Part shown: piece by piece, positions 7,141-36,327 of the stretch | How the letters are laid out: each line of letters begins with the position of its first letter | Numbering within the stretch: position 1 is the stretch's first letter | Assembly: GCA_002269645.1 (NCBI GenBank) | Contig: NIVC01000108.1 | Location: 1 to 64,000, forward strand | DNA from: Macrostomum lignano | Lineage: Eukaryota | Direction of reading: 5' to 3' | DNA length: 64,000 bases | Translations under genes and position numbers: made by a program | The notes under the pieces: generated by a model | Told to the model about the DNA's origin: nothing | Seen by the model: only the letters and a program-made list of their open reading frames with translations | The model's database searches: none

Positions 7141-7215
7141 CTTCATGTATAGCTTCATTTACATCATGTATAGCTTCTATATCTGCCGGTCCCGCCTTCC
7201 GCAGCTCCGCCCGCA

Positions 7216-15100: not shown

Positions 15101-15329
15101 TGCCGCTGTCGAACAGCATCCGCAGGCGCTGCCTCGGCGCCACCTTCTTGTTGACGCTGCAGTGGCGCTGGTGGCCGCGCGGCCCCCCGCCGGCGCTGGC
15201 CTCGGCCTCGAGGGCGTCCAGCGCGGCCTGCAGGCGGCGCATCTCAGCGGCTGCTTCAGCGAGGCCGCCCAGCTGCAGCTTCGCCAGCGGGGAGCCGAGC
15301 AGGGCGCGCAGTGGCCGCGTGGTGCGCAT
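12131..15329 (-). CDS. Methylcrotonyl-CoA carboxylase beta-like (MCCC2-like paralog) carboxyltransferase, about 538 aa, 5 coding exons
   Basis: Exons 15026-15329, 14258-14436, 12953-13512, 12589-12871 and 12131-12421 join in frame (1617 nt). Motifs: [51 protein letters not shown]. The true N-terminus is uncertain. Confidence 0.88.
13522..14180. repeat. 22-bp minisatellite in MCCC2-like intron 2
   Basis: Unit GGGGAGTATGGGGATCAGGAAT. Confidence 0.95.
14490..15000. repeat. 18-bp minisatellite in MCCC2-like intron 1
   Basis: Unit ATCAGTGACAATGAGGCT. Confidence 0.95.
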
Positions 15330-15350
15330 GCGGGCGGCTGCTGCGGAGTG

Positions 15351-16425
15351 GCAATGGTCTAGCAATCCACCCTGACACCTGACTGACGGCAGCAATGGTC
15401 TAGCAATCCACCGACACCTGACTGACGGCAGCAATGGTCTAGCAATCCACCCTGACACCTGACTGACGGCAGCAATGGTCTAGCAATCCACCCTGACACC
15501 TGACTGACAGCAGCAATGGTCTAGCAATCCACCCTGACACCTGACTGACAGCAGCAATGGTCTAGCAATCCACCCTGACACCTGACTGACAGCAGCAATG
15601 GTCTAGCAATCCACCCTGACACCTGACTGACGGCAGCAATGGTCTAGCAATCCACCCTGACACCTGACTGACGGCAGCAATGGTCTAGCAATCCACCCTG
15701 ACACCTGACTGACGGCAGCAATGGTCTAGCAATCCACCCTGACACCTGACTGACGGCAGCAATGGTCTAGCAATCCACCCTGACACCTGACTGACAGCAG
15801 CAATGGTCTAGCAATCCACCCTGACACCTGACTGACAGCAGCAATGGTCTAGCAATCCACCCTGACACCTGACTGACGGCAGCAATGGTCTAGCAATCCA
15901 CTCTGACACCTGACTGACGGCAGCAATGGTCTAGCAATCCACCCTGACACCTGACTGACGGCAGCAATGGTCTAGCAATCCACCCTGACACCTGACTGAC
16001 AGCAGCAATGGTCTAGCAATCCACCGACACCTGACTGACGGCAGCAATGGTCTAGCAATCCACCCTGACACCTGACTGACAGCAGCAATGGTCTAGCAAT
16101 CCACCGACACCTGACTGACGGCAGCAATGGTCTAGCAATCCACCCTGACACCTGACTGACAGCAGCAATGGTCTAGCAATCCACCCTGACACCTGACTGA
16201 CAGCAGCAATGGTCTAGCAATCCACCCTGACACCTGACTGACGGCAGCAATGGTCTAGCAATCCACCCTGACACCTGACTGACGGCAGCAATGGTCTAGC
16301 AATCCACCCTGACACCTGACTGACGGCAGCAATGGTCTAGCAATCCACCCTGACACCTGACTGACGGCAGCAATGGTCTAGCAATCCACCCTGACACCTG
16401 ACTGACAGCAGCAATGGTCTAGCAA
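15351..16425. repeat. 41-bp satellite between BRAP and the MCCC2-like gene
   Basis: Unit AGCAATGGTCTAGCAATCCACCCTGACACCTGACTGACGGC. Confidence 0.95.
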
Positions 16426-16804
16426 AGATGAATTCGGGGAAGCTGAGGCTCTTTGAAGGGGAACCTGGGGAAGCAAATCCATATTATTATCCAATGAATA
16501 ATGGAAGATTAAATAAATATACCAATAAAGACAAGCTGCAATCAGTGAGCCAATGAGCAAGCAGACACAAAAGTACACAAAGTGATCCGTGCAGCATGGA
16601 TATTTATATTTAGCTATGTAGAAATTTCAACAGGAAATACAGGCTTAAAAAAGGAACAGGAAAGCAAAGACGCTAACACGAGTTGAGTAATAAATTGTGA
16701 TAGCCTTGATACGTCATATAATATTCGAACTAATTGTATTTGAATGCTGATGCAGAACAACTGAGGGGCTGAAATGAGCGGCTCGTGCTGGGGGAAACCA
16801 TCAG

Positions 16805-17577
16805 TCACTTCCTGCCGCTCCTCTTCTTGGCGGACTTGGAACCGCTGGCACCCTGCTGCGGCTGCTCACCGACCACCAGCTGGCTGCCGACTGCTTCATC
16901 CTGAGTCAGCTGACCGGCCAGCTGCTGTCCAGCCTCCAGGTGTGCGTACAGGTCCCTCATCTCCTCCCGCAGCTGCTCCAGCTCCTCTTCCTTCTTGCGC
17001 AGCTCGGCTACGCGGCGAGCCTGGAAGATGGGATTGGTGGGGATGAGGCTGGGAAGCAGGGTTGAGATGCAGTTGGAAAACTGGGCGAGGATGAGGCCGG
17101 GAAGCTGGGTTGAGATGGAGTTGGAAAACTGGGCGAGGATGAGGCCGGGAAGCTGGGTTGAGATGGAGTTGCAAAGCTAGGCAAAGATGAGGCTGGGAAG
17201 CTGGGCGAAATTAGGACTGAGTCGAGAATGAGACAAAACAGCAATTTCTTTTCGCTCCGACTCCAGCCCTTTCCCACGATTCGCACCTCCTCAGCCTGCA
17301 GCCGCTCCTGCAGGTCGCGCTGGTTGGCCAGCATGCCCGAGTTGAAGCCGCGCTCTTCGTCCAGCTCCTTCTGCAGCTTCTGCAGCCGGCTGTTCGTCTG
17401 GCCAAGCCGCTTGTCCAGTGCGGCCCGCTCGCGTCTGGCCTCCTCCAGCTCGGCCATGGTGCGGAGCCGCTGCTCCCGCTCCTGCTCCGCCTGTGGTGGT
17501 AGCGTGTGCGGGACTGGCTGACTGATAGCAGGCAGGCAGACAAACAGACAGACAGACAGACAGGCAGACAGATAGCC

Positions 17578-17628
<51 letters not shown>

Positions 17629-17633
17629 TAGCC

Positions 17634-17700
<67 letters not shown>

Positions 17701-17749
17701 TAGCCAGACAGACAGACAGACAGACACACAGACACAGACAGACAGACAC

Positions 17750-17820
<71 letters not shown>

Positions 17821-17863
17821 CAGACAGACACACAGACAGACACACAGACAGACAGACAGACAC

Positions 17864-17902
<39 letters not shown>

Positions 17903-17993
17903 CACAGACACAGACAGACACACAGACAGACAGACACACAGACAGACAGACAGACAGACAGACACACAGACAGACAGACAGACAGACAGACAC

Positions 17994-18068
<75 letters not shown>

Positions 18069-18087
18069 CACAGACACAGACAGACAC

Positions 18088-18142
<55 letters not shown>

Positions 18143-20375
18143 CAGACAAAAGGACACGCACCTGCAGCGCTGTCTCGCGCAGGTTTGCAGCCTGCTGCTC
18201 AAGCTGCTCCTCATAGTAGAGCCGCTGGCTCTCCAGCTGGGAGGTGAGCAGGTAGGTGTACTCCAGCGTCACCGCGTCCAACTTATCGTCCGGTACGTCG
18301 CCGCCGACCTGCACGAGTTTGCCGTCGGCCTTGTTCTGCACCAGCCGGTGGACGAAGTTGTCGCCGCAGTAGTCCCAGACCCGGTCCGTGCCCACCTGGA
18401 CGAGTTGCGTTTGCGGTAGCATTTAGAGTTGGCGAGAGCACACAACCAACCAATACTGTACGCAGGCACTCACACACAGCTCACACACAGCTCACACACA
18501 GGTCACACACAGCTCACACACAGGTCACACACAGGTCACACACAGCTAACACACAGCTCACACACAGCTCACACACAGGTCACACACAGCTCAGACACAG
18601 CTCACACACAGCTCACACACAGCTCACACACAGCTCACACACAGCTCACACACAGCTCAGACACAGCTCACACACAGCTCACACACAGCTCAGACACAGC
18701 TCAGACACAGCTCACACACAGCTCACACACAGGTCAGACACAGCTCACACACAGCTCACACACAGCTCACACACAGGTCACACACAGCTCAGACACAGCT
18801 CACACACAGCTCACACACAGCTCACACACAGCTCACACACAGCTCACACACAGCTCAGACACAGCTCACACACAGCTCACACACAGCTCAGACACAGCTC
18901 AGACACAGCTCACACACAGCTCACACACAGGTCAGACACAGCTCACACACAGCTCACACACAGCTCACACACAGCTCACACACAGGTCACACACAGCTCA
19001 GACACAGCTCACACACAGCTCACACACAGCTCACACACAGCTCACACACAGCTCAGACACAGCTCACACACAGCTCACACACAGCTCAGACACAGCTCAG
19101 ACACAGCTCAGACACAGCTCACACACAGCTCACACACAGCTCACACACAGCTCACACACAGCTCACACACAGCTCAGACACAGCTCAGACACAGCTCACA
19201 CACAGCTCACACACAGCTCAGACAGGGTGTACAGCAGCCCTGGCATTCTAATCGTCAGGCATTTGCACTCCTTGGGGTTTGGCTCTCATGTGTGTGAATG
19301 GATTTCTCGTGAATTTTCCGCCGAGCTGCTCTGCCTCCCAACGACTCACCTCCATAGCGAAGGTGTGGCTGGTGCTCCTGAAGTGCTCATACGCGTGCCC
19401 GCCGGTGTAGCGGCCGCAGCCAACGTAGCCGCAGATCAGGCAGATCCACAGACTGTCGGTGTCGCCGCACAAGGAGCAGCTGTTGCCGTCGGAGCTCTGC
19501 GGGGTGGCAACGTAGCGGCACACGGGGCAAGAGGCCTCGTGCCACTTGTCCAGGCAGCGCAGGTGGAAGCTGTGGTTGCACAGGATGGTCAGGATGCCCT
19601 TGAGCGGCTCGTCAAGCCGGTCCAGGCACACTGGGCAGGTGGGCAGCTCCACCAGCTCGCGCACGGGGAACTGGGCGCCGCGGGACCGGGTCTCCACGCG
19701 GGCCACGTAGGCCAGGCAGCAGGTGAGCTCGGGCTCCAGCGAGCTGAACGGCTCGCCGTGCTTGGCGCTGTAGAACTGGTCCGCGGCGGCCTGGTCGGTG
19801 AACTGCAGCAGCACCATGAACTGGCCTGGCGACCGGTCCCTGATGATCTTCATCTCCAGCAGCTCGGAGCCGCTGTCCGCCACGAACTGAGCCAGGTCAA
19901 TCACCGTCATGTGCGCCGGCACCGCCAGCATCACCAGCACGGAGGGCCGGGCCGAGCCCCAGTCTCCCGTGTCCTTCATCAGGTGCAGCATGCCGTGCGT
20001 CAGGCCGGCTGACGGGTTGCCGGAGAAAAATGCCCGCTCGATGGCGGCCGACGGAGCCGCCGACAGCGCTGGCGGCTTCGGCTCCGTGGACGGCTGCGAT
20101 TCAGGCGGCTGCTCCGCCATTGCTGCCAGGGCCTGCGGAGTCACCGATGCAATGCGGATTTCGTGAGGAACTCGCTGGCCTCGGCACTCGGCTGCTGCCG
20201 CGGCTTCTGCGGTGTCCGAGGCGGCCGCGGCTGCCGGCTTGCTGAGGCAGCGGGTGTAGAAGGGGGCGCAGTAGCTCAGGTGCGCTACTGGGCTGTCGGG
20301 AGAGTCGCAGCTGTCAGTCAGCTCAAACAGCAGCACCAGCAGGCTGGGCCGGGGGCTCGCGTCAGCGCTGTCCAT
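16805..20375 (-). CDS. BRAP: BRCA1-associated protein BRAP/IMP (BRAP2 domain, RING, ZnF-UBP, coiled coil), about 559 aa, 4 exons
   Basis: Exons 19350-20375, 18162-18395, 17287-17490 and 16805-17020, all phase 0. Motifs: [63 protein letters not shown]. Confidence 0.95.
17525..19222. repeat. BRAP intronic microsatellites: (CAGA)n at 17525-18148 and (CACACAGCT)n at 18470-19222
   Basis: Direct inspection. Confidence 0.95.
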
Positions 20376-20409
20376 GCCATGGGGCGGCCTGCAGCGGCGG
20401 GGCGAGGCT

Positions 20410-21052
20410 GGTGACACACCTGGCTTGGGGCATGGAGCTGGTGACACACCTGGCTTGGGACATGGAGCTGGTGACACACCTGGCTTGGGACATGGAGCTG
20501 GTGACACACCTGGCTTGGGGCATGGAGCTAATGACACACCTGGCTTGGGGCATGGAGCTAATGACACACCTGGCTTGGGGCATGGAGCTGGTGACACACC
20601 TGGCTTGGGGCATGGAGCTGGTGACACACCTGGCTTGGGGCATGGAGCTGGTGACACCTGGCTTGGGGCATGGAGCTGGTGACACACCTGGCTTGGGGCA
20701 TGGAGCTGGTGACACACCTGGCTTGGGGCATGGAGCTGGTGACACACCTGGCTTGGGGCATGGAGCTGGTGACACCTGGCTTGGGGCATGGAGCTGGTGA
20801 CACACCTGGCTTGGGGCATGGAGCTGGTGACACACCTGGCTTGGGGCATGGAGCTGGTGACACACCTGGCTTGGGGCATGGAGCTGGTGACACACCTGGC
20901 TTGGGGCATGGAGCTGGTGACACACCTGGCTTGGGGCATGGAGCTGGTGACACACCTGGCTTGGGGCATGGAGCTGGTGACACACCTGGCTTGGGGCATG
21001 GAGCTGGTGACACACCTGGCTTGGGGCATGGAGCTGGTGACACCTGGCTTGG
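20410..21052. repeat. 30-bp satellite between the XRN1 poly(A) signal and the BRAP acceptor
   Basis: Unit GTGACACACCTGGCTTGGGGCATGGAGCTG, with 28-bp variants. Confidence 0.95.
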
Positions 21053-21064
21053 GTCATGAAGTAG

Positions 21065-21070
21065 TTTATT
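21065..21070 (-). terminator. Probable XRN1 polyadenylation signal AATAAA
   Basis: TTTATT on the + strand, about 430 nt past the XRN1 stop and immediately before the satellite. Confidence 0.55.
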
Positions 21071-21500
21071 AAAGAAAATGAATGAAAGAACGCCAGAAAT
21101 ATATTTTCTTGAACACAACAGGCAGTACCAGGTGGAGCGGCTATATTATCTTATCTACCAAACGGCAGAGGCTCTGCAGCGAATTGCTTGCAGAAGCAAT
21201 ACAAGCAACACCAAAAACAATAAAAATATTGATGAGGCTGCAGGCAGAACGCCGGAGCGGCATGAACACTTGAGACTTAAAAATCGGAGAGAGAATTAGA
21301 TGAAGCTAATAATTATTAAACTGGCGGGAGTTACAAACCGCTCGAACGCTAAGAGTCGGAGAAACATGTCAAAGCAGTAGAAATCCAGCAATTAGAGCTA
21401 AATTTGAGTCACACAAGCACTGGAGGGAGATGTCAAAACAGAACGAAGTCTTCAGTTATCTAGTCTACAGCTCAATAGGTACTCAACAGAGTTGAGCAGT

Positions 21501-24379
21501 TCAACTGCCCGGCTGCTGCTGAGACCCCAGGCCGTCCAGGTTGATGCCCAGCCGCTTCTTCGGGGCAGATTTCGGTTTCTTCGAGCCGTTCGAGCGCGGC
21601 TTTTGTTGCTGCTGCTGCTGTTGTTGTTGCTGCTGCTGCTGGTGCTTCGAAGTTGCAGACGCAGTTGCGGCAGCTGCGGGCTGGTCGGCAGCGGGCTTCG
21701 GGATCTGCAGCATGGCCCGCAAGGCCTGCTCCACTGCCTGGGCCTTCGGGTCCTGCGGCTGCTGCTGCTGTTGTTGCAGATTCTGTCTTTGCTGCTGCTG
21801 CTGTTGCAGATTCTGTCTTTGCTGCTGCTGCTGTTGCAGATTCTGTATTTGCTGCTGCTGCTGTTGTTGCAGATTCTGTATTTGCTGCTGCTGCTGTTGT
21901 TGCAGATTCTGTCTTTGCTGCTGCTGCTGTTGTTGCAGATTCTGTCTTTGCTGCTGCTGAGCTGAAGCAGGCTGGTAGGTGTAATTTGACTGCGGCTTAC
22001 TGTACTGCTGCTGGTGAGATCTCTGCCTTTGATGCTGCGGCTGCTGTTGGGGCTGCTGTTGCACTTTTAGCGAATTGCAATAGTCGCAGAGTCTGCGCAC
22101 CTGAAGAGAGAAAATTTAAGGAATAAAGAAGCAGAGAAGTAAGAGTGCCTTTGTCCACTTGGGAACTGTCTAAGCAAGCTTTTGAGCACTGCACCTGTGA
22201 GTGTGGGACCAGTACTTTACCTGTGAGTGTGGGACCAGTACTGTACCTGTGAGTGTGGGACCAGTACTTTACCTGTGAGTGTGGGACCAGTACTGTACCT
22301 GTGAGTGTGGGACCAGTACTTTACCTGTGAGTGTGGGACCAGTACTGCACCTGTGAGTGTGGGACCAGTACTGTACCTGTGAGTGTGGGACCAGTACTTT
22401 ACCTGTGAGTGTGGGACCAGTACTGTACCTGTGAGTGTGGGACCAGTACTTTACCTGTGAGTGTGGGACCAGTACTGCACCTGTGAGTGTGGGACCAGTA
22501 CTGTACCTGTGAGTGTGGGACCAGTACTTTACCTGTGAGTGTGGGACCAGTACTGTACCTGTGAGTGTGGGACCAGTACTTTACCTGTGAGTGTGGGACC
22601 AGTACTGCACCTGTGAGTGTGGGACCAGTACTTTACCTGTGAGTGTGGGACCAGTACTTTACCTGTGAGTGTGGGACCAGTACTTTACCTGTGAGTGTGG
22701 GACCAGTACTGCACCTGTGAGTGTGGGACCAGTACTGTACCTGTGAGTGTGGGACCAGTACTGCACCTGTAAGTGTGGGACCAGTACTGCACCTGTGAGT
22801 GTGTGACCAGTACTGTACTTGTGAATTTGGGATCAGTACTGCACCTGTGAGTGTGTGACCAGTACTGCACTTGTGAATTTGGGATCAGTACTGCACCTGT
22901 GAGTGTGTGACCAGTACTGCACTTGTGAATTTGGGATCAGTACTGCACCTGTGAGTGTGTGACCAGTACTGCACTTGTAAATTTGGGATCAGTACTGCAC
23001 CTGTGAGTGTGTGACCAGTACTGTACTTGTGAATTTGGGATCAGTACTGCACCTGTGAGTGTGTGACCAGTACTGTACTTGTGAATTTGGGATCAGTACT
23101 GCACCTGTGAGTGTGTGACCAGTACTGTACTTGTGAATTTGGGATCAGTACTGTACCTGTGAGTGTGTGACCAGTACTGCACTTGTGAATTTGGGATCAG
23201 TACTGCACCTGTGAGTGTGGGACCAGTACTGCACTTGTGAATTTGGGATCAGTAATGCACCTGTGAGTGTGTGACCAGTACTGCACTTGTGAATTTGGGA
23301 TCAGTACTGCACCTGTGAGTGTGTGACCAGTACTGTACTTGTGAATTTGGGATCAGTACTGCACCTGTGAGTGTGTGACCAGTACTGTACTTGTGAATTT
23401 GGGATCAGTACTGCACCTGTGAGTGTGTGACCAGTACTGTACTTGTGAATTTGGGATCAGTAATGCACCGGTGTGTGTGTGACCAGTACTGTACCTGTGA
23501 GTATGTGACCAGTACTGTACCTGTGAGTATGTGACCAGTACTGTACTTGTGAATTTGGGACCAGTACTGCACCGGTGTGTGTGACCAGTACTGTACTTGT
23601 GAATTTGGGATCAGTAATGCACCTGTGAGTGTGTGACCAGTACTGTACTTGTGAATTTGGGATCAGTAATGCACCTGTGAGTGTGTGACCAGTACTGTAC
23701 TTGTGAATTTGGGATCAGTAATGCACCTGTGAGTGTGTGACTAGTACTGTACTTGTGAATTTGGGATCAGTACTGCACCTGTGAGTGTGTGACCAGTACT
23801 GTACTTGTGAATTTGGGATCAGTACTGTACCTGTGAGTGTGTGACCAGTACTGTACTTGTGAATTTGGGATCAGTACTGTACCTGTGAGTGTGTGACTAG
23901 TACTGTACTTGTGAATTTGGGATCAGTACTGCACCTGTGAGTGTGTGACTAGTACTGTACTTGTGAATTTGGGATCAGTAATGCACGTAATTCGTTCAAT
24001 CCAGCACTACATGTACTTAATTGGCTGCCCTGTGGACGATTCAAGCAGAATATCTGCGTACTAACCGAGGCCGATTCTGCTTAACTCCAGCCTCGCTCGC
24101 GCCCCCGACTCACCACATCAAGCTTGGCCTCGGGCCGGGACCGCATCGGCTGCCCCTCCATCACGAAGCCGTTGGGGAATCGAACCACGGCGGAGCAGGC
24201 GTCCCCGTACACCTGGAAGTCTATGGCCGGGACCGGCCAATCCCATTCGGCTAGCAGGGAGTTCAGCAGGCGCTGGGACTCGTGCTCAGCCGTAGGCTGG
24301 TTTCGGGCCGGTGAAGCGGTCTGCTGCACAGGCTGCTGCTGCTGCAGGGCGGACACCAAGGCTGAGAAGTTGAACGACC

Positions 24380-24421
<42 letters not shown>

Positions 24422-27400
24422 TTGGCTGCTGGTTTGCTCTGCCCTGCTGCTGCTTGTGCTGCTGCAGGTCGGCCCACAGCTGAACATGCTGATCCGGCCG
24501 GTCCTTGCAGGCCACGGTGAGCCGGATGTTGGGGTTGGTCCGCTCGCCGTGGCTCAGGTTGAGAATGGCGGTGCCGCTCACCAGGCAGCAGCCGTCGACG
24601 CCGCGGATTTTGATGCCGCCTTCGAAGGGCTCGTCAAGGAGAAGCTCCAGCTCCGGGTCGCTTTCGCGCACGCCTGGCGGGAAAAGGGCGCAGAGAATAT
24701 GGTCTGGGGCAGCTCTGTGTGCAAGGAGGAGCAGTGCATAACACACTGAGGGAGCAGTGCATAACACACTGAGGAGGCAGTGCATAACACACTGAGGGCG
24801 CAGTGCATAACACCGAGGGAGCAGCGCATAACACACTGATCAGAGGGAGCAGTGCATAACACACTGAGGGAGCAGTGCATAACACACTGAGGGCGCAGTG
24901 CATAACACACTGAGGGCGCAGTGCATAACACACTGAGGAGGCAGTGCATAACACATTTGCAGTTACTAAGGATGCTCACAGGCCCGGATACCGATGATGG
25001 TTCCCAGACTGTCAAGCGGCGGGCCCGTCCCCGGCCGGCAGAGGACCACGCGGTCCTTGAGGCGGTGGACAGCGGCCGGGTCGGGCTGGCAGTGCTTGGT
25101 GTCGGACTGGCAGCGGTACAGGTGGCCAGCCGGGATCTCCGTGGCGGACACGTCCGGCTTGGGCAGTTTGGGCAGCTGGGAGTCCAGAGCCTGGCGGATG
25201 AGGCTGACGGAGCGCCCAGACAGGATGCTGCTGCCGACAGGCACCCGCTCGGCTCCGTAGCACGGCAGGCTGCGCAGGAACTCCGTCAGGCGCTCAACAG
25301 GCGGCTCGGCCCCGCCCCAGATCTGCTCGGCTGACAGGTCGCCAGTGTCCGAGCCGTGCTTGCCTGCCAGACAGCGGAACAGCTCGGGAAATTCAGCGGC
25401 ATAGTCGCACAGCACCTGGGCCAGCGACGGCGAGTACTGCCAGCCAATGGAGGCGTCCTTGCGGGTCCAGCCGGCCACCTCCTGTCCGGGGGGGGGGTGA
25501 GTTTTTTGCATAGTTACTATATAGGTCTTAATTTCCAGCCCAGGTAGGAAGAAAAGCCCGGACTCACCTGCTCAGCCCGGTTGAACTTCAGCTCCAGTCC
25601 GATGTTCAGCCGGCGGCTGCGGGTGTCCGTCGCCGACGAGCTGACGTTGGCGTCCAGGTCTGATGGCGAAAGCGGCTTCTTCGGCTGCTGCGGCAGAGAG
25701 ACCAGCACCGTGCCGGTGATGCGGGACACCAGGTGGCCGGAGAAGCCTGCGGGTTGTTTGTGGGAACAGGGGCGGATTCCATTGGGTTCGGTTGGAACAG
25801 GGGCGGATTCCATTGGGTTCGGTTAGAACAGGGGCGGATTCCATTGGGTTCGGTTGGAACAGGGGCGGATTCCATTGGGTTCGGTTGGAACAGGGGCGGA
25901 TTCCATTGGGGTTTGGTTGGAACAGGGGCGGATTCTATTGGGTTCGGTTGGAACAGGGGCGGATTCCATTGGGTTCGGTTGGAATAAGGGCGGATTCCAT
26001 TGGGTTCGGTTGGAACAGGGGCGGATTCCATTGGGTTTGGTTGGAACAGGGGCGGATTCCATTGGGTTCGGTTGGAACAGGGGCGGATTCCATTGGGTTC
26101 GGTTGGAACAGGGGCGGATTCCATTAGGTTCGGTTGGAACAGGGGCGGATTCCATTGGGTTCGGTTGGAACAGGGGCGGATTCCATTGGGTTCGGTTGGA
26201 ACAGGGGCGGATTCCATTAGGTTCGGTTGGAACAGGGGCGGATTCCATTAGGTTTGGTTGGAACAGGGGCGGATTCTGAGAAAATTTTGAGGCGCACCTG
26301 TTCTCTGAGCCAGGGCCTGGGCAGACAGGAAGCAGTCCTCAGAGTCCACCACGCTGAGGTCGGGCTGCCGCCTCACCCTGAGCTGCAGGCGCACCTTGGT
26401 CTGCTTGAAGCCCAGCACCGGGCCGCTCATGCCGTACCAGTTGCCCTTGGCAACGAACGCCAACTCGCCAACCGGCAGCACGTCCTCCATGCGCAGGGCG
26501 GGCCCGGACTCCGGCACCGGCTCTGGCAGGCAGCGCTGCAGCACGAAGGGCAGCGCACCCTGCGACCACTGGGCCGCTTGCGGGCGGTGCCGTCCCGGTC
26601 GAAGTCCAGCACACGGCCCAGCAGCGTCTTGGCGGTCAGCAGACAGGGCGTCTCGTCTGGAGCGGGGAAGGGGCAGCTGTGAGCACACTGGGGATTTGGG
26701 GCAGCTGTGAGCACACTTGGGATTTGAGGCAGCTGTGAGTACACTGGGGATTTGGGACAGCTGTGAGCACACTGGGGATTTGGGACAGCTGTGAGCACAC
26801 TGAGGATTTGGGACAGCTGTGAGCACACTGGGGATTTGGGACAGCTGTGAGCACACTGGGGATTTGAGGCAGCTTTGAGCACACTGGGGATTTGGGACAG
26901 CTGTGAGCACACTGAGGATTTGGGACAGCTGTGAGCACACTGGGGATTTGGGACAGCTGTGAGCACACTGGGGATTTGAGGCAGCTTTGAGCACACTGGG
27001 GATTTGGGACAGCTGTGAGCACACTTGGGATTTGAGGCAGCTGTGAGCACACTTGGGATTTGAGGCAGCTGTGAGCACACTGGGGATTTGAGGCAGCTGT
27101 GAGCACACTTGGGATTTGAGGCAGCTGTGAGCACACTGGGGATTTGAGGCAGCTGTAGATAGCAAGATCCCAGGCACTCACCGCCAACGGAGATGCCGTA
27201 CCGGTTCCAAGACTCCTGCCGCACCAGATCCCACTGGCTCTTCATGAGTGCTGCGTCCCTGTCGGAGAGCTGCTCGCACTGGATGGCGCCGTCCGGGCCG
27301 AGCGTGTAGCGCCGGGTGGTTGAGCTGACGGCCACCGCGTGCACCTCGCTGAGGTGCGGCCAGCCGGCCAGCACAGTTTTGCCCAGCAGGGCGGCGGCCG

Positions 27401-30400
27401 CCCGCTGCACCCGGTCTTCGTCAAACTCGCAGTCAGTGAGGGTGAGCACGGTGTTCTCGCCCCGGCTGGCGAACTGGAACACCTTCACGCCGGCTTTGCG
27501 CAGCTCGGCGGTGAACGGCAGGCCGCGCAGCACGGGAAAGCCGGGCAGGTGGGCGGCGCGGCACACGGGCGGCGCCAGTTTGTCGGCGCTAATCCGGAAA
27601 CCAAACGGCTCGATCTCGGTGCGCCTGCAGTTGCGGCTGGCCGGGTCCCACTGGAACAGCAGGTGCGGCCGGAAGCAGTTCCTGGCCCGCTCCTCCTCGG
27701 TGAGCTGCGGCAGGCGGGGCCGCATGGCCGCCAGCAGCTCGTCCTCGTCAATGAATGGGATCAGCACCACGGCCTCCCAGTCCTGCTTCTTGCCGTTCAG
27801 GTCGGTCTCGAACTCGGCCGGGTAGAACTGCTGCACGGGCGAGTCGACCGAGTCCATGAGCGGCCGGAGGCAGTCGGGCAGCAGGGGGCCGCTGGCCGCG
27901 GGCAGGACGGCCATGAGCTGCTGGAAGGGCAGAAACGGGTGGCCGAGGTCGAACTGCAGGTCCAGGTCCGCGAAGTCGCGCACGTCCGAGATGTAGCTGA
28001 AGATCGGTGGGTTGGGGGAAGCTCTTTGGGGTCTGGAATTTAAAAACCACCGAGCCATGTAAAACATGTCCACCCGGATCCTCTACCCGAATCTTTCAAC
28101 AGGATCCTCCACCCGGATTATTTACCAGGATCTTTCAACAGGATCCTCCAGCCGGATCCTCTACCAGGATCTTTCAACAGGATCCTCCAGCCGGATCCTC
28201 TACCAGGATCTTTCAACAGGATCCTCCAGCCGGATCCTCTACCAGGATCTTTCAACAGGATCCTCCAGCCGGATCCTCTACCAGGATCTTTCAACAGGAT
28301 CCTCCACCCGGATTATTTACCAGGATCTTTCAACAGGATCCTCCAGCCGGATCCTCTACCAGGATCTTTCAACAGGATCCTCCAGCCGGATCCTCTACCA
28401 GGATCTTTCAACAGGATCCTCCACCCGGATTATTTACCAGGATCTTTCAACAGGATCCTCCAGCCGGATCCTCTACCAGGATCTTTCAACAGGATCCTCC
28501 ACCCGGATTATTTACCAGGATCTTTCAACAGGATCCTCCAGCCGGATCCTCTACCAGGATCTTTCAACAGGATCCTCCAGCCGGATCCTCTACCAGGATC
28601 TTTCAACAGGATCCTCCACCCGGATTATTTACCAGGATCCTTCAACAGGATCCTCCAGCCGGATCCTCTACCAGGATCTTTCAACAGGATCCTCCAGCCG
28701 GATCCTCTACCAGGATCTTTCAACAGGATCCTCCACCCGGATTATTTACCAGGATCTTTCAACAGGATCCTCCACCCGGATTATTTACCAGGATCTTTCA
28801 ACAGGATCCTCCAGCCGGATCCTCTACCAGGATCTTTCAACAGGATCCTCCAGCCGGATCCTCTACCAGGATCTTCCAACAGGATCCTCCACCCAGATCC
28901 TCCACCCGGATCTTTCAACAGGATCCTCCACCCAGATCCTCCACCCGGATCTTTCAACAGGATCCTCCACCCGGATCTTCCACCACCACCAGGATACTAA
29001 ACCAGGATATTTCACTCGGATCTTCCAGACGGATCCTCCACCAGGATCCTCTACCAGGATCTTCCATTCATGATCCTTCACAAGGAAACTTCCTAAACAC
29101 TGGACCCGGATCACCGTAACCCGGTCAATTTCTAAGCGAGGGACCTTTTAAAACCTTTTTACACATACTACAAAGAGATTAGCTCGATAGTGTTCTCTTG
29201 CTACTATTAGTAGGCGATATCTAATAGGCCAGCTACACAAAATAGCAGAGAGCCACTCACGGAGCGTAGTGCTGCGGGTAGAACCAGCCCCACGAAGGCA
29301 CGCCCCTGTAGTAATAGTACAGCACCCACTGCAGGCCGCGCACGTACTCTCGGGTCTGCCGACGGCGCTCTGTCTCGTCGAATTGCAGGCCCATCTTGCC
29401 CTGCACGAATTGAGAAAACATGATATCATGAATTTAGTTCGCACAAGTCTACTTACAGTAGAAACATAGGGATTTCACTATCGGAACTACACTGACCTGA
29501 TAGTACTCCTGCTTCATCATCTGCATCTCGTCGGCGAGGAAATCATCCTCACTGGTGGAGTCCGAGTCCTCGGTCCCGGCGCTGTTGCCGCTGGCCCCGT
29601 CGGCCAGGAGGTTGTCCAGCAGGTCGGGCGGCTGGCCGAGCCGCTCCAGCTCACGCGCCATCCGCTCACCTTGGCGGCCCTTCATCCAGCGCATGTCGCT
29701 GCACTTCTCGCGCAGGGTGTCATCGTCGAACTGGGCCAGGGTGGCGAAGTAGGCCTGGGGGGCGGCGGGAGGTGGGGAGACTGAGGACTGCCGCACTTCA
29801 GGTATCGGGACTTCTGTCTGGCTGCAGTGTGACAGGGAATTCTATCTGGCTATAGAGCAGGGGAATTCTATGTTGGTTATAGGATAGGGGAATTCTAAAA
29901 TGTTGGTGTAGCACAGGGGAATTCCATAATGCTAATGAAGGACAGGGGAATTCTAAAATGCTAATGTAGGACAGGGGAATCCTATAATGCTAATGTAGAC
30001 CAGGGGAATCCTATAATGCTTATGTAGGACAAGGGAATTCTATTATGCTAATGTAGGACAGGTGAATTCTAAAATGCTAATGTAGGACAGGGGAATTCTA
30101 AAATGCTAATGTAGGACAGGGGAATTCTAAAATGCTAATGTAGGACAGGGGAATTCTATAATGCTAATGTAGGACAGGGGAATCGGACATACTAAACATG
30201 TCTCTCTACTTTCCCACCAATCAAAAGCAGTTGCGCACCTGCAGCCGGTGCAGGGCAATTTCTCCATTGCACTGCAGGTAGCCATCTAAAGTGGGAAGCA
30301 CTTTCTTGTAGGTGTTCCACAGCATCGGCAGGGCCTCTGAATGGATGTGCAGATCCGGAAGGTGAGGCAGGAAGTCGTTGCCAACCAGGAAGCCGAGCAG

Positions 30401-33400
30401 CACCCAGTCGTCGATGATTCGCTCGAGATCGTAGCCGAATTTGAGGTCGGCTCGGAGGCTGCGAAACTCGATGTCGATGTAGTCGCGTAGCAGTGACAGG
30501 TGCAGCAGGAAGAAGGTGATGGTCTCCGGGGCGCTGGCCTTGCCGTGAGACTTCTTGTCCTTTTTGCCGCCGAACCGAACCTGCAGAGGAGAGAGCGATC
30601 TTTCTTAGGTATTTGTAAATTGAATTCTCTGAAATACTCTATTTACTTTGCTTACTACTCATCGCCAGTTGTCAGTAGCCTGCTAAGGATATAAAAATTT
30701 ATTTTAAGAGACTCGAAATTTGAAGTGAGAAGTGAGTGATAGAACCCACTTGCTCCTAGACTCTGCTTTAGCCTACTTTTAGACATATTTAGCGCGAATT
30801 ACTATCGACTTTTCCGATGAGAAATCAGACCTGTCAGTTATGGCCATAGACTAAGCTCTTAAAGCACCGAAACAATGAAAACACTCGAGTTGAAGTTGCA
30901 CATCTAGGGGCGTCTACAGAATTCTGAAGTACACGAATTGCCTACTGCTCACCTCCTCTCTGAGCAGCGAGAAGTGCGCCTGATGGCTGGCCAGGCCCAG
31001 CATGATGAGGTCAGCGTCCAGGCCGTACAGGCAGTGCCGGGTGTCGGGTCATAGTCCGGCAGGCTGCGCTCATAGCGAATGAACTCCATGATCTTGTGCT
31101 CACCCTCGCCGGGAGTCTGGTGGCCAGACAGCACAACCCGGATACCCCGCCACAGCGGGTCCTCGGCCACCTTGCGCTGGGCAAACTCGGTCAGGGCGTC
31201 CTGCAGGCGGGCCATGAATGGCGTGCCTGGCGTGATGCAGTTCGAGTCGAAGCGGGACTCGGACGGCAGCGTCTCGCCTTTGCGGATGGCCCGCGCCTCC
31301 TGCGACTCGGCCTCCTTGGCTGAGCGGAACCGGCGGGACCGCTGCTGGTTCATCTTGGCTCTGGGGGCGAGCGGGGGGAGAAACTTGGGATTCTTTGACA
31401 GACATGGGATATTGGGATCAGCTGACAGATATGGGATATTGGGATCAGCTGACAGACATGGGATATTGGGATCAGCTGACAAATATGGGATATTGGGATC
31501 AGCTGACAGATATGGGATATTGGGATCAGCTGACAGACATGGGATATTGGGATCAGCTGACAGATATGGGATATTGGGATCAGCTGACAGACATGGGATA
31601 TTGGGATCAGCTGACAGATATGGGATATTGGGATCAGCTGACAGACATGGGATTTTGGGATCAGCTGACAAGCATGGGATATTGGGATCAGCTGACAGAC
31701 ATGGGATTTTGGGATCAGCTGACCCCCATGGGATATTGGGATCAGCTGACAGACATAGGGATCTTAGAACAAACTGAGAGAAATGGGATCTTGGGATCAG
31801 GAACATGGGGATCTTCCACGTTGCATATAAAGCAGCAAACACAAAAAATTACCTGGGAGCAACGCCATCAACGGCCATGAAGAACACTTTTTTAGGCTTG
31901 ATCATGCGAAAGATGAAATCTACATAGTTCATCACATTCTTGAACATCTGCTCCTCGGACATGCGGAAGTGAATATTGTCATCCTCGGGATGCGAGCACG
32001 GGTGAATGATGCCGTTCATGTCCAGGTAGAGATTGTCAAACTCCGGGATCTGAGCAGTTAATGTGGTTTAAAATAGCTAATTTTTTACTCATGACCACTT
32101 GAGCAATACAAGACAATAAAATATCAATCAGTTTTTCAAATATGCTGCTTTATTGCCTTAATATCATCATATTGGCAATGACAAGACAAAGTTGTTATCA
32201 AATATTAAGTGCTACTGCTAGTAGCTATAAATATATTTTAAAGTGTTGGCAAGCACCCTGAAACAAAGACATTATTCCATAACTAGTCTAAGGCCAATTT
32301 TGCCCATACGAGCACATAAAAGTATGTGGTTATTATATCCTGGCCAGCACTTATCCACACTCATATAGGGTATACAATGGCCCTGACACCCCCCTTAGAC
32401 AAAGACTAGAAAAAATCAAAGGGGAGACCAAGCAAATTTTTACAAAAAAAAACAAAGCTACCTCTTTGCCTCCTTTTCAAGTCTTTACCTTCCAGAATCA
32501 GCTTCTAGTCAATTCAACAACAAGCCAATTTGGCAACAACCAATTTGGTGACAAGTTGGTTTGGCGACAACCAATTTGGCGAATGCTAAAACCTAAAGCA
32601 TTAAGCTACTACAACTCATTGAATTCTAAATATGTATATATAAACACTGCCTTTTGCCTTTACCATTCTATGCTTAGGTGCAACCTAGGGATTCACCCAG
32701 CCATTTCTATTAGCAACACATAAGTAAATTGCTATTGAACAAAATAGTAGTCATGTGACTACTCTTAGCTAATAGTGACTTACATGTATATATTGTCAAT
32801 AGAAATGGCAAAATGATTCCCAAGGTTACATATGTATATGCCATTAAATATAGAAGAAATGTTTTTATCATGTCAAATTGTATGTTTTCAAAAATATATA
32901 TAACATTTTATACTTTCTATAGAGATAGGGTGCTGATCATTTTGGCAAAAGACCATTTTGGAGAATCTATTTTAGCAAATAAAATGACCATTTTGGCAAA
33001 GCCTATGGAGCTTAACAAAACATTTGTTTAACAAAACAAGACAATGAAATGCTAGCATAAGTTTATCTCTAATAGAGAAATTAATATCCATTTCTTATAA
33101 TTAAGTGATAATAAGAGTGGACTGACTATATTATATGTTAAGAAATAACATATAATATAACATATTATAACAAAGGCAAAGGCATTATAACATATAACAA
33201 AGGCAATAAAAGTTGTAATAATTTTGAGCACATAATTTTGAGTTGTAGCTAGTAATTCAATACTTTTAATTTAATATTCAATTAAATAAAGGTAAATAAA
33301 CTATATTAAATATTTTGTTTGCTGAAGTAGTCATTGCATTTGCCAAAGTAGATTCTTCAAAATGGTCTTTCATTAAAGTGGGCTTTGCAGATGTAGGCTT

Positions 33401-34607
33401 TTGCTGAAATGGACTGAAACCACAGAGACATAGGCACTAGCATATGCTGGGGGATACATGGCCATGTATACTATTTTCCTATCTGACCCAACATATTAGC
33501 CATAGTGTGGATCATGCTAAGTGCACGCGAGAAATGACCCAAAGCTAATTCCCAAAAGCACGCCGACGACAAGCGAATGCACACCGATGCATGCCAATAA
33601 ATTAAAATTCAAATTGAAGACAAAAAACGTATTTTAAATTGCATTGTATAAAACAAAGCAACAAATGACGTACAAAAGAAATGATATATCTTTAAAAACA
33701 TGTATTTTTTCATACAATAATTCATTTAACAGTCTTATACACTGTTTATTTACAATAGTTTTTTTCAAAAGTTAAATACAATAATACGTATATTATGTCT
33801 GCTTACCATTGCATTGGCAGCTTTGCCACATCAGGTGCCAGGCACGCGGCACGCGGCGCATGCCAGGCACGCCAGTATATTTATGTAGTGTGCATTATGC
33901 ACGCCAAATGCATGCCACTTACCTAATTGCACGCCGGTGCACACCACTTTTGAAAATGCACGCGGGAAAATTCTCGCGTGCACTACATGATCTACACTAT
34001 GGCATATTAGGCTTAAATACTTTGACGGTTATTTAGCATTTGTTGAGAAAAAAATGCCACTAAATTACTACTGATTGCTAGCAACTTGCTGGTGGCTTTC
34101 TGAGAGGGACATTTTGTGCTTGTTACTTGTATCTCAACATTAGTTTTACTAAAATACATTTTACATTTAAAACTGACAAAAGGCATGTTGCCAAATTGAC
34201 TATCACTGAATTGATTTGTCACCAAATTAACTGGTTCCCTTAGAATCTGCCCCCCCCCCTCAAAAAACTTTTGGTTGTGCTACTGCTTTGAGCTACCTAT
34301 AATGGTATCAAAATCCTGGTAGTAGAAGTAAAAATTATTAGCCTAGGCCTAATCAAAAAAAGTAGGCCTAATACATCATATTTGTTTTATGAATAATGCA
34401 TCAGCTATAAGTACATTTTTGCAAGTATGTAGACCTAAATAATAATACTAATATGATCCTAAAAGCCAAAAATATTTATATTAATAAAACAAAATATTTG
34501 TACAAAAACTGAAGTCAGAGACTCAAAAATACCTCATGTTCTCGAACAATTTCTGACAGACATGGATATCGCTCGCTTATCCATCTGAAAAACTTGGGCA
34601 CACCCAT
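21501..34607 (-). CDS. XRN1: 5'-3' exoribonuclease 1, 12 exons, about 1478 aa once two 1-bp deletions are corrected
   Basis: Exons 34533-34607, 31853-32049, 30953-31360, 30239-30580, 29497-29754, 29261-29400, 27182-27996, 26298-26656, 25568-25746, 24980-25481, 24114-24673 and 21501-22100. Motifs: [99 protein letters not shown]. Frameshifts at about 31044 and 26577. Confidence 0.95.
22190..23985. repeat. 26-bp satellite grading into a 52-bp dimer, XRN1 intron 11
   Basis: Monomer ACCTGTGAGTGTGGGACCAGTACTGT. From about 22800 it alternates with ACTTGTGAATTTGGGATCAGTACTGC. Confidence 0.95.
24725..31760. repeat. Private minisatellites in XRN1 introns: 23-bp (24725-24960), 31-bp (25760-26275), 28-bp (26670-27155), 39-bp (28070-29110), 29-bp (29840-30182) and 27-bp (31395-31760)
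   Basis: Each array has a different unit and lies wholly within one intron. Confidence 0.93.
33499..34003. mobile_element. MITE with terminal inverted repeats (TIRs) of about 35 bp
   Basis: GCCATAGTGTGGATCATGCTAAGTGCACGCGAGAA versus the reverse complement of the right end GCCATAGTGTAGATCATGTAGTGCACGCGAGAA. ATATTA flanks both sides. Confidence 0.75.
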
Positions 34608-35286
34608 GATTCAAAATTTAAACTCTGTTTGTTGTTGAATTAAAAAGCAGCAATCAAGTTGAAGACTTTGTGAGCAGTCCTATGCCAGGTTCAGGTAAAA
34701 CTACAGCAAGTAAAATCGTAATAAGATAAATAATATCTTTAACGCCTCAACCTGTACGAAAATTATTTAAAATTGATGTAATCAAAAGCGAAAAGATATC
34801 TGCGTAGACAACGCTTTAGAAACAAATGTTTAAAAATAAAAATTGTGCAGAGTACTAAAAAACCATAATTTTACTTATTTTGCCCAAAAATAAATTTTGC
34901 AGAAAGGCAGTGTTAAAAATGTGCCAGTCTTTACATAAAGTAAAACAAGTGTTAAATGCTAAGTAGTGTATACTTTAGTTTTATTACTTTTTAGTATAAG
35001 AATTACTTTAAAAAATTCTACTGAACAATACTTGCAGAACTCTTACTCTTTATGTTGACTATTACTTAACTTTCTTGGAAAAGTATTTTCGAAAACAATA
35101 CACTACGGAGATAGGGAGTTTTATTTTTTTCAGCACAAAAATGGTTACTGATTCCGATAAGAGGCCGACCCAGTGTTTATCCTTTGATATGTTGTGCCTT
35201 TCATATAGCTCAATTGATATTCAAAAATCTTTTCGTTCAGAATATTAAGATTCTATGTTTATTTTATAGGCCCCCTATCCAATTCC

Positions 35287-35696
35287 GGCAATGTCCTAGT
35301 TTCCCGCGTTAAATTATTTTGACCCGATTTTTGTCGTTTTCAGCACAAATCATGGCTGGATGACCTCGAGCACTGCAAATATCATACCTCCTGCTAATTT
35401 GCAGCCATCAACTGACCTCTGTGACATTGAGATCAGTCACTGCGATCTGGTGCTGTTGACACTTGACAGTTGATGCTGAGTCGACTATGCATTGGCTGGC
35501 AACCTATCATCTAATAGCAAACTCATGGAACTGCAGCCACCGTCAGGAAGCTTTCTGTACTGGCTGACACATTACTACACCGTGTAATACTCCTTTTAAG
35601 ACCTAAGACTCATTTTAAACTTAATAAACTTGCTTTTGTTTGTTCATTTTAAATTTCAGGTCAAAATAATTTAATGGGTGAAACTAGGACATTGCC
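35287..35696. mobile_element. MITE, 17-bp TIR, 8-bp target-site duplication (TSD)
   Basis: GGCAATGTCCTAGTTTC ... GAAACTAGGACATTGCC. TSD CCAATTCC at 35279-35286 and 35697-35704. Confidence 0.85.
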
Positions 35697-36029
35697 CCAA
35701 TTCCTTACATAACAAAAACATACAATTCTACATGTCCTGTGCCTAAAAACTATTAAAATGGCACAGCTTGGCTTGTTTGGTTTTAGGAATCTATTTATCA
35801 TTATGAGCTGACTGTTTGATGTTTAATAATATATATAATAGGGACAACTAAAACTACCAGGACGTGAAACAAGCCATATCATGGCAAAAAGTTTGTTCAT
35901 TCTTCTATGGTCCTATAGCTGAGATACTTTAATTAGATTGAAAAATAAAATTAGAATTGGTGCAGAAATGTCGTGAAATTTTTTCTTATATAACTAGCAA
36001 GTCGTAGTAGAACCCTTGCTGTACCTGTA

Positions 36030-36327
36030 CATACATGTGCAACCTCCAAAATTCGGTCAGCCGTGCGACTTAGTTTTAACAAAAATGCGACGTAGTTTTT
36101 GGCCAAAAATGCGACTTACATATAAAAAAACCCGAAAGCAAAATTAACGCAACTTTGGGTAAACGGCAGGAGTAACTATGACTGTTTTATTAAGCTGAAA
36201 TGCCTCGTCAGCTACTTAGTACTACTCTTCAGGTTATTTTTTGGGTGGGCATTTTTGCGACTTCCTTGATTGGCCGCCAAATTGGTCGGCCGGATCGGCC
36301 GACCCGGCCGACTGTTGCGCATGTATG
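36030..36327. mobile_element. hAT-like MITE (CATACATG family)
   Basis: CATACATGTGCAAC ... GTTGCGCATGTATG. 8-bp TSD TACCTGTA. Confidence 0.85.

What the first reader, a model, noticed from the sequence alone, without database searches (positions are those of the whole stretch)
15341..34607. Putative XRN1-BRAP-MCCC2-like operon with satellite-filled spacers
Seen: three co-oriented genes. Only about 675 nt separate the XRN1 AATAAA (21065-21070) from the BRAP acceptor (20389), and about 640 nt of that is a 30-bp satellite. About 1075 of the 1464 nt between the BRAP stop and the MCCC2-like acceptor is a 41-bp satellite. Almost no unique DNA is left for independent promoters. Known: polycistronic units resolved by SL trans-splicing occur in flatworms and nematodes. 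Inference: one promoter upstream of XRN1 drives all three genes, and expandable satellites act as the intercistronic regions, possibly tuning downstream processing by copy number.
Basis: partly seen in the sequence, partly recalled or inferred. Interest (0 to 1): 0.7.

Follow-up and report, generated by a model that had tools for sequence, protein, structure and literature searches.

The report
Flatworm operon candidate with minisatellite spacers
Three same-strand genes of the flatworm Macrostomum lignano look like one trans-spliced operon whose spacers hold tandem repeats, but repeat-filled operon spacers are already published for this species and the repeats fill the introns just as much, so the locus is ordinary.

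Summary
The window is Macrostomum lignano contig NIVC01000108.1, positions 1-64000. On the minus strand lie XRN1 (34607 to 21501), BRAP (20375 to 16805) and an MCCC2-like carboxyltransferase (15329 to 12131). A 30-bp array (652 nt) and a 41-bp array (1075 nt) sit at the stated places.

The operon reading is plausible but not shown. M. lignano has spliced-leader trans-splicing, and about 15% of its genes are in predicted operons. Ustyantsev and Berezikov (2021) already reported that repeats inflate operon spacers. This trio meets their distance criterion. Public gene models for both downstream genes begin at or within 4 nt of the acceptor AGs. I had no RNA data, so independent promoters in the 442-nt and 379-nt unique 3' regions remain possible.

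The idea that the satellites are special, tuning spacers is not supported. Ten of 14 XRN1 and BRAP introns are 63-94% tandem repeat. Three genomic copies are 98.7-99.4% identical outside repeats, yet they carry 18, 22 and 75 units of the 30-bp array and 5, 9 and 26 units of the 41-bp array. Intronic arrays vary as freely.

Verdict: an ordinary member of a known kind, of low interest.

The parts
34608..39390 (.). AT-rich, repeat-poor region between XRN1 and the divergent DUF92/TMEM19-like gene. It is the likely site of the promoter that drives XRN1 and, under the operon model, the whole unit.
   Evidence: 33% GC and 1.7% tandem repeat over 4783 nt. There are no long ORFs. DUF92 hit on the + strand at 40517-40768. 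The promoter role is inferred, not shown.
21501..34607 (-). XRN1 (5'-3' exoribonuclease 1). It has 12 coding exons, and 7 of its 11 introns are 73-93% minisatellite. This copy carries two 1-nt homopolymer deletions, at about 31045 and about 26573.
   Evidence: Pfam XRN_N, XRN_M and XRN1_D1. Exon-8 deletion shown against L002 and L003.
21059..21500 (-). XRN1 3' UTR: unique sequence at 41% GC, ending in AATAAA (21070-21065), 6 nt before the array.
   Evidence: Conserved in all three copies apart from a 13-nt and a 2-nt indel.
20407..21058 (-). Spacer 1 minisatellite. The 30-bp unit is CATGCCCCAAGCCAGGTGTGTCACCAGCTC in the sense orientation, 21.9 copies.
   Evidence: TRF score 1213. The orthologous arrays have 18.0 copies in L002 and 75.0 in L003. 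The unit contains one ATG.
20389..20406 (-). Unique C-rich tract plus CTGCAG: the predicted trans-splice acceptor of BRAP. It matches the published [T/C]TNCAG motif.
   Evidence: Sequence, motif. The L002 gene model starts at ctgcagg|CCG.
16805..20388 (-). BRAP (BRCA1-associated protein, RING and UBP zinc-finger E3 ligase). It has 4 coding exons, ATG at 20375, and three introns that are 63-94% tandem repeat.
   Evidence: 100% identical to PAA90509.1 (BOX15_Mlig006518g1). Exact exon mapping. Intron repeat cover.
16426..16804 (-). BRAP 3' region: unique sequence at 39% GC with no canonical AATAAA. Variant hexamers lie at 16740, 16610/16608 and 16488.
15351..16425 (-). Spacer 2 minisatellite. The 41-bp unit is TTGCTAGACCATTGCTGCCGTCAGTCAGGTGTCAGGGTGGA in the sense orientation, 26.4 copies.
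   Evidence: TRF score 2031. The orthologous arrays have 5.4 copies in L002 and 9.4 in L003.
15338..15350 (-). Unique CACTCCGCAGCAG: the predicted trans-splice acceptor(s) of the MCCC2-like gene.
   Evidence: Sequence. In all three copies the public model starts at cagcagcc|GCC, which fits an exon start right after the second CAG.
12131..15337 (-). MCCC2-like carboxyltransferase. ATG at 15329. It is the last gene of the co-oriented run, and a convergent zinc-finger gene follows at 7207-11109 (+).
   Evidence: Pfam Carboxyl_trans.

Best explanation
This is a three-gene, SL-trans-spliced operon candidate of Macrostomum lignano, of the kind already described genome-wide. The proposed mechanism has four steps.
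1. Pol II starts in the AT-rich region upstream of XRN1 and transcribes XRN1, BRAP and the MCCC2-like gene as one precursor.
2. XRN1 mRNA is cleaved and polyadenylated just after AATAAA (21070-21065).
3. The 35-nt spliced leader is added at the AG at 20389, 13 nt before the BRAP ATG. It is added again at CAG 15341 or 15338, 8-11 nt before the MCCC2-like ATG.
4. The arrays are discarded with the intercistronic RNA.

The two satellites are not dedicated spacer elements. They are neutral, fast-changing, locus-specific minisatellites of the sort that fills most long non-coding transcribed segments at this locus. Only the processing signals at each end stay unique.

Shown: the gene identities, the anatomy, the repeat cover, the copy-number variation, and the positions of the public gene-model starts. 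Inferred: polycistronic transcription and SL addition at these sites.
For: Organism and published background:
- The window is M. lignano Mlig_3_7 contig NIVC01000108.1.
[quoted passage not shown] After repeats are subtracted, distances between trans-spliced genes peak near 100 bp. The published operon rule is a repeat-adjusted distance under 1 kb plus a trans-spliced downstream gene (PMC8629364).
- About 7% of assembled transcripts are multi-SL precursors, and gene models were cut at SL and poly(A) sites (PMC5730564).

This locus:
- The unique residue is 24 nt from the XRN1 AATAAA to the AG. From stop codon to AG it is 460 nt (spacer 1) and 392 nt (spacer 2).
- The co-oriented run of exactly three genes is bounded by opposite-strand genes.
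- The BRAP acceptor CTGCAG fits the published motif.
- The 3' ends of both spacers (array, then 10-18 unique nt with a short C-rich tract, then CAG) look like the 3' ends of the cis introns here.
- Public 5'-partial models begin right at the AGs. This holds for the MCCC2-like gene in all 3 copies and for BRAP in L002.
- Each 30-bp unit carries an ATG, so the array cannot sensibly be part of a mature 5' UTR.
- Gene order and both arrays are shared by three contigs.
- All three genes have human homologues, the class enriched among trans-spliced genes.
Against: - No RNA evidence was available to me: no SL reads, no poly(A) reads and no bridging transcripts.
- About 60% of trans-spliced M. lignano genes are not in predicted operons.
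- The 442 nt and 379 nt of unique AT-rich DNA upstream of the arrays could hold internal promoters.
- Raw spacers are long: up to 2758 nt in L003.
- BRAP has no canonical AATAAA.
- The MCCC2-like acceptor does not match [T/C]TNCAG, although only 44% of published sites do.
- The BRAP model starts in L001 and L003 lie 4 nt and 25 nt downstream of the exon start that the AG predicts, so they are not exact.
Confidence: 0.6

Rival explanations
1. The three genes are independent transcription units. BRAP and the MCCC2-like gene each have their own promoter, in the upstream gene's 3' UTR or last exon, or in the array itself. Their pre-mRNAs start upstream of or within the array, and SL trans-splicing removes the array as an outron. 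The genes are trans-spliced but not polycistronic.
For: - About 60% of trans-spliced genes in this species are not assigned to operons.
- 442 nt and 379 nt of unique sequence at about 40% GC precede the arrays.
- In M. lignano, 2 kb or less of upstream DNA sufficed for the reporters tested.
- Raw distances of 0.6-2.8 kb are long for intercistronic regions.
Against: - The candidate promoter DNA overlaps the upstream gene's 3' UTR.
- The distance from any such promoter to the acceptor would vary 4-5 fold between near-identical copies.
- The published rule would class the pairs as operonic if the downstream genes are trans-spliced.
- The spacers resemble the local introns, not the repeat-poor 33%-GC region upstream of XRN1.
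Confidence: 0.27
2. The arrays are ordinary cis-spliced introns in the 5' UTRs. A short non-coding first exon of BRAP (or of the MCCC2-like gene) lies upstream of the array and is spliced to the AG in front of the ATG.
For: - The array, then 10-18 unique nt with a short C-rich tract, then CAG is the layout at the 3' ends of the cis introns here.
- The repeat units contain weak donor-like AG|GTGT sites.
Against: - No GT[G/A]AG donor lies between the poly(A) signal and the array. In spacer 1 only 6 nt lie there.
- The public models are 5'-partial and begin at the AG, with no upstream exon.
- The unit GTGTG and GTGTC do not fit the species' donor consensus GT[G/A]AG.
Confidence: 0.07
3. The 30-bp array encodes a repetitive N-terminal extension of BRAP. 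An ORF at 19248-21029 runs from the array into exon 1.
For: - The ORF is open through the array.
- An older ab initio prediction (UniRef A0A1I8IVP2, P0004) starts with array-encoded residues.
Against: - 28-nt variant units shift the frame inside the array.
- Copy number is 18, 22 and 75 in near-identical copies, whereas the truly coding 33-bp repeat in XRN1 is fixed at 6.3 copies.
- The RNA-based models start after the AG.
- The M. lignano sequence just after [10 protein letters not shown] resembles the extreme N-terminus of human BRAP. This comparison is from memory and was not tested.
Confidence: 0.02
4. The arrays or their lengths are long-read assembly artefacts.
For: This contig has homopolymer indels that look like PacBio errors. 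Array lengths in assemblies are error-prone.
Against: The same arrays lie at the same sites in three separate contigs, and their flanks differ by SNPs and indels. The existence of the arrays is therefore secure, although exact copy numbers may not be.
Confidence: 0.03

Closest known systems
Macrostomum lignano SL operons with repeat-inflated intergenic regions (Ustyantsev and Berezikov 2021, PMC8629364; annotation from Wudarski et al. 2017, PMC5730564)
   Same: Same species and same assembly. Adjacent co-oriented conserved genes. A short unique spacer once TRF repeats are subtracted. Three genes (18% of predicted operons have three). A single 35-nt SL.
   Different: No known difference. This locus was not described individually, and I could not see its SL or T-fill tracks. 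Here the spacers are almost pure single-family minisatellite rather than mixed repeats.
Caenorhabditis elegans SL2-type operons
   Same: Polycistronic precursor. The upstream 3'-end formation is coupled to trans-splicing of the downstream gene. Unique spacers are about 100 nt. The genes are functionally unrelated housekeeping genes.
   Different: C. elegans uses a dedicated SL2 and a U-rich element in a spacer of about 100 nt. M. lignano has one SL. The raw spacers here are 0.6-2.8 kb, and no U-rich element is evident in the 24 unique nt of spacer 1.
Operons of parasitic flatworms (Schistosoma, Echinococcus and others; PMC12582326)
   Same: Flatworm lineage. A single SL type is used for operonic and monocistronic genes. 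Operons are inferred from proximity plus SL evidence.
   Different: That study used a threshold of 300 bp or less. The raw distances here would fail it. XRN1 and BRAP do not occur in the main text of that paper.
Satellite-containing introns of Drosophila Y-linked genes kl-3 and kl-5 (PMC6508621)
   Same: Tandem-repeat DNA lies inside a Pol II transcription unit and must be transcribed through and discarded.
   Different: Those are megabase arrays in cis introns with a dedicated expression programme. Here the arrays are 0.2-2.3 kb, and there is no evidence that they have any effect.

Membership tests
M. lignano SL-resolved operon (published operational definition) | The genes are immediately adjacent, on the same strand, and not interrupted by an opposite-strand gene. 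| tested here: met
   XRN1, BRAP and the MCCC2-like gene are all on the minus strand. The flanking genes are on the plus strand.
M. lignano SL-resolved operon (published operational definition) | Intergenic distance under 1 kb after subtracting TRF and RepeatMasker repeats. | tested here: met
   From stop codon to AG: 460 nt (spacer 1) and 392 nt (spacer 2) of non-repeat DNA. From the AATAAA to the AG in spacer 1: 24 nt. Only TRF repeats were subtracted.
M. lignano SL-resolved operon (published operational definition) | The downstream gene carries the 35-nt SL on its mRNA (SL-containing reads map at its 5' end). | not testable with these tools
   No RNA reads were available. Indirect evidence only: the public 5'-partial models begin at the AGs, and one acceptor matches [T/C]TNCAG. 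The SL sequence itself is not in the window, which is expected for a trans-acting RNA.
M. lignano SL-resolved operon (biological definition) | A single promoter and a polycistronic precursor that spans the spacers. | not testable with these tools
   This needs bridging reads, RT-PCR, and CAGE or chromatin data.
C. elegans-type SL2 operon | A specialised downstream SL and a U-rich element in an intercistronic region of about 100 nt. | tested here: not met
   A single SL is reported for the species. The spacer 1 unique sequence is 6 + 18 nt, C-rich, with no U tract.
Functional (length-sensitive) regulatory satellite | The array is specific to the regulatory position, and its copy number is constrained or tracks function. 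| tested here: not met
   The same class of array fills 10 of 14 XRN1 and BRAP introns. Copy numbers are 18, 22 and 75 for the 30-bp array and 5, 9 and 26 for the 41-bp array, in copies 98.7-99.4% identical elsewhere. Intronic arrays vary equally, and only a coding repeat is fixed. Any link to expression was not testable.

The most novel reading that the evidence does not exclude
The length of the intercistronic minisatellite sets how much polymerase reaches the downstream cistron, or how efficiently that cistron is trans-spliced. Under this reading, the 4-5 fold differences in array length between the three near-identical genomic copies give copy-specific XRN1:BRAP:MCCC2-like expression ratios. 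More broadly, transcribed non-coding segments in M. lignano would be preferred sites where locus-specific minisatellites arise. That would fit the contrast between most long introns and spacers (63-96% repeat) and the 4.8-kb upstream region (1.7% repeat).
Probability: 0.08. Interest if true: 0.6.

Novelty: new member of a known kind. Interest (0 to 1): 0.22.

Why it matters
It matters little beyond annotation. The locus is a clean worked example of why raw intergenic distance fails as an operon criterion in M. lignano. It also shows how minisatellites break or mislead gene models. In this copy XRN1 is annotated only as a 677-aa fragment, and an older BRAP prediction runs into the array. If the minority reading were true, the three copies with 18, 22 and 75 units and with 5, 9 and 26 units would be a ready natural experiment on spacer length and operon output, in an animal where transgenesis is available.

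Tried and rejected
1. RNA-level evidence. The protein searches found no transcript-derived (Logan or transcriptome) contigs for M. lignano BRAP, only three NCBI genome models. SL-bearing 5' ends could therefore not be read.
2. Supplementary tables of PMC5816591 and PMC5730564, and a full-text search for Mlig006518, gave nothing on this locus.
3. I tested whether the acceptor regions are diverged copies of the repeat units, which would make the arrays decoy acceptors. Local alignment of the flanks against the units was no better than shuffles (209/500 and 358/500 shuffles reached the observed score). Rejected.
4. Two protein searches for XRN1 did not return the M. lignano XRN1 models.
5. I searched for an SL RNA gene or SL remnant in the window and found none.
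6. The reading that the 30-bp array codes for a BRAP N-terminal extension was rejected (see the rival explanations).
7. The bacterial promoter and terminator scan was not used, because it does not apply to an animal genome.


Full report
**What the sequence is.** BRAP exon 1 is 100% identical to NCBI protein PAA90509.1, 'BOX15_Mlig006518g1, partial', of Macrostomum lignano. That protein's contig, NIVC01000108.1 (assembly GCA_002269645.1, Mlig_3_7), matches the window base for base, with window coordinate equal to contig coordinate. The window is therefore from a free-living flatworm in which spliced-leader (SL) trans-splicing and operons are documented.

**Checking the observation.** TRF reports a 30-bp array at 20407-21058 (21.9 copies, 97% matches) and a 41-bp array at 15351-16425 (26.4 copies, 97% matches). 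Read on the minus strand, the layout is as follows:
- The XRN1 stop is at 21503-21501.
- A unique 3' UTR of 442 nt ends in AATAAA (21070-21065).
- The array begins 6 nt later.
- After the array come 18 unique nt (CCTCGCCCCGCCGCTGCAG), ending at 20389.
- The BRAP ATG is at 20375, 13 nt after the AG.
- The BRAP stop is at 16807-16805, followed by 379 unique nt, the 41-bp array, and CACTCCGCAGCAG.
- The MCCC2-like ATG is at 15329.

Pfam confirms the gene identities: XRN_N, XRN_M and XRN1_D1 for XRN1; Carboxyl_trans for the MCCC2-like gene; BRAP2, RING and zf-UBP for BRAP.

**Gene models and surroundings.** XRN1 has 12 coding exons from ATG 34607 to stop 21501, and all 11 introns have GT...CAG ends. 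BRAP has 4 coding exons. The co-oriented run contains exactly three genes:
- Downstream lies a convergent zinc-finger gene at 7207-11109 (+).
- Upstream lie 4.8 kb at 33% GC and 1.7% repeat.
- Beyond that lies a divergent DUF92/TMEM19-like gene on the plus strand.

**What is already known.** Ustyantsev and Berezikov (PMC8629364) report the following:
- About 30% of M. lignano genes receive one 35-nt SL, and about 15% lie in predicted operons.
- The top motif at trans-splice acceptors is [T/C]TNCAG.
[quoted passage not shown] After TRF and RepeatMasker intervals are subtracted, distances between trans-spliced genes peak near 100 bp.
- Their operon rule is a repeat-adjusted distance under 1 kb plus a trans-spliced downstream gene.

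Wudarski et al. (PMC5730564) found that about 7% of assembled transcripts are multi-SL precursors. They cut gene models at SL and poly(A) sites. They also give tandem repeats as about 13% of the genome.

**Does this trio fit?** The geometry does. The non-repeat residue is 24 nt from the XRN1 AATAAA to the AG, and 460 nt and 392 nt from the stop codons.

I could not obtain RNA data, because no transcript contigs for these genes are in the searchable collections. No supplementary table or paper mentions the locus. The indirect evidence is the public, RNA-seq-derived gene models, which are 5'-partial and open to their first base:
- The MCCC2-like model starts at cagcagcc|GCC in all three genomic copies. 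That fits an exon start right after the second CAG.
- The BRAP model in copy L002 starts at ctgcagg|CCG, one nt after the AG.
- The BRAP models in L001 and L003 start 4 nt and 25 nt downstream of the exon start that the AG predicts, so they are less exact.

CTGCAG fits the published motif. CCGCAG and CAGCAG do not, but only 44% of published sites match. Each 30-bp unit contains an ATG. A mature 5' UTR running through the array would therefore carry about 22 upstream ATGs, which argues that the array is removed.

**Are the satellites special to the spacers?** They are not.
- The window is 36.7% tandem repeat.
- Ten of the 14 mapped XRN1 and BRAP introns are 63-94% repeat. On approximate boundaries, both long MCCC2-like introns are about 84% and 89% repeat.
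- Each array has its own unit and leaves roughly 13-130 unique nt at each intron end.
- The 3' ends of the spacers (array, then 10-18 unique nt with a short C-rich tract, then CAG) cannot be told apart from the 3' ends of introns.
- Not every intron carries an array. XRN1 intron 1 (2.5 kb, 33% GC) has 2.5% repeat, like the upstream region.

**Three-copy comparison.** The assembly holds two further copies, L002 (NIVC01004258.1) and L003 (NIVC01001281.1). Both have the same gene order, including the convergent zinc-finger gene. Outside repeats the copies are 98.7-99.4% identical, and the junction sequences are essentially the same. Every array is present at the same site in every copy whose fetched locus reaches it, but most copy numbers differ:

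| Array | L001 (window) | L002 | L003 |
|---|---|---|---|
| 30-bp, spacer 1 | 21.9 | 18.0 | 75.0 |
| 41-bp, spacer 2 | 26.4 | 5.4 | 9.4 |
| 28-bp, intronic | 17.4 | 44.4 | 37.3 |
| 23-bp, intronic | 9.8 | 27.9 | 23.7 |
| 4-bp, intronic | 155 | 103 | 228 |
| 33-bp, coding, XRN1 last exon | 6.3 | 6.3 | 6.3 |

The spacer arrays behave like unconstrained intronic DNA. This does not disprove a length effect, but it gives no support for a designed or tuned spacer. Assembled array lengths also carry some uncertainty.

**Explanation.** The most likely reading (about 0.6) is an SL-resolved operon, XRN1 to BRAP to MCCC2-like, driven from upstream of 34607. The arrays would be neutral filler in the intercistronic RNA. 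The main rival (about 0.27) is independent promoters in the 442-nt and 379-nt unique 3' regions, with the arrays removed as outrons. About 60% of trans-spliced genes in this species are not in predicted operons, so this rival is serious. Minor rivals are cis-spliced 5'-UTR introns, a coding N-terminal repeat, and assembly artefact. Each has specific evidence against it (see the rival explanations).

**Ideas that failed.** I suspected that the acceptors were diverged repeat units, but the alignments were no better than shuffles. No SL sequence is in the window.

**Verdict.** The locus is an unremarkable new member of a known, published kind. Interest is low. The only open and mildly interesting question is whether array length affects downstream expression, and the three copies would allow that test.

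Noticed in passing
window about 31045 (XRN1 exon 3) and about 26573 (XRN1 exon 8), minus strand: This copy of XRN1 has two 1-nt deletions in homopolymer runs (GG to G, and CCCC to CCC) that break the reading frame. The exon-8 deletion is absent from the other two genomic copies, which carry full 1474- and 1477-aa models. This explains why NCBI annotates only a 677-aa C-terminal fragment here (26490-21501). It is either a long-read consensus error or a real pseudogenising change in one copy.
   Followed up: partly
window 21758-21959 (minus strand, XRN1 last exon): A 33-bp tandem repeat lies inside the coding sequence, in the Q-rich C-terminus of XRN1. It is fixed at 6.3 copies in all three genomic copies, unlike most of the non-coding arrays, which vary.
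   Followed up: partly
window 40.8-43.4 kb, plus strand: The same layout recurs on the other strand. Downstream of a DUF92/TMEM19-like gene there is an AATAAA at about 42533 and arrays at 42748-43268. An earlier array lies at 41690-42258. Then comes a C-rich tract ending in CTCAG at about 43321, about 60 nt before the ATG (43382) of a DNA ligase III-like gene (zf-PARP and DNA_ligase_A_M). This may be a second repeat-filled operon spacer.
   Followed up: partly
window 19248-21029 (minus strand): An ORF is open from the 30-bp array into BRAP exon 1. An older ab initio prediction (UniRef A0A1I8IVP2) starts with array-encoded residues. This shows how minisatellites whose unit is a multiple of 3 can mislead gene callers.
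   Followed up: yes
window 1128-1190: About 10 copies of TTAGGG (telomere-type repeat) lie 1.1 kb from the start of the contig. This could be an interstitial telomeric sequence or proximity to a chromosome end.
   Followed up: no
window 3410-4743 and 6186-7137; 8440-8844 and 9092-10597: Unlike the locus-specific arrays in the three genes, these pairs of arrays share a unit. The first pair shares the 23-bp unit AAACATAAAAGAGCCACCATGTC. The second pair shares a 25/26-bp unit, TTTCTTAGAATCC...GTGGAGG. The second pair lies within the span of the zinc-finger gene.
   Followed up: no
window 54114-54794 (minus strand): A mariner-type transposase fragment (Pfam Transposase_1, E 4.8e-09) lies in a lower-GC, repeat-poor block.
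   Followed up: no
It may be a diverged paralogue rather than the true MCCC2 orthologue.
   Followed up: no
L001, L002 and L003 unique flanks: The three copies are mosaic. In the XRN1 3' UTR, L001 is the odd one out (a 13-nt and a 2-nt indel). In the BRAP 3' region, L002 is the odd one out. This suggests recombination or gene conversion between copies, or chimeric assembly.
   Followed up: no
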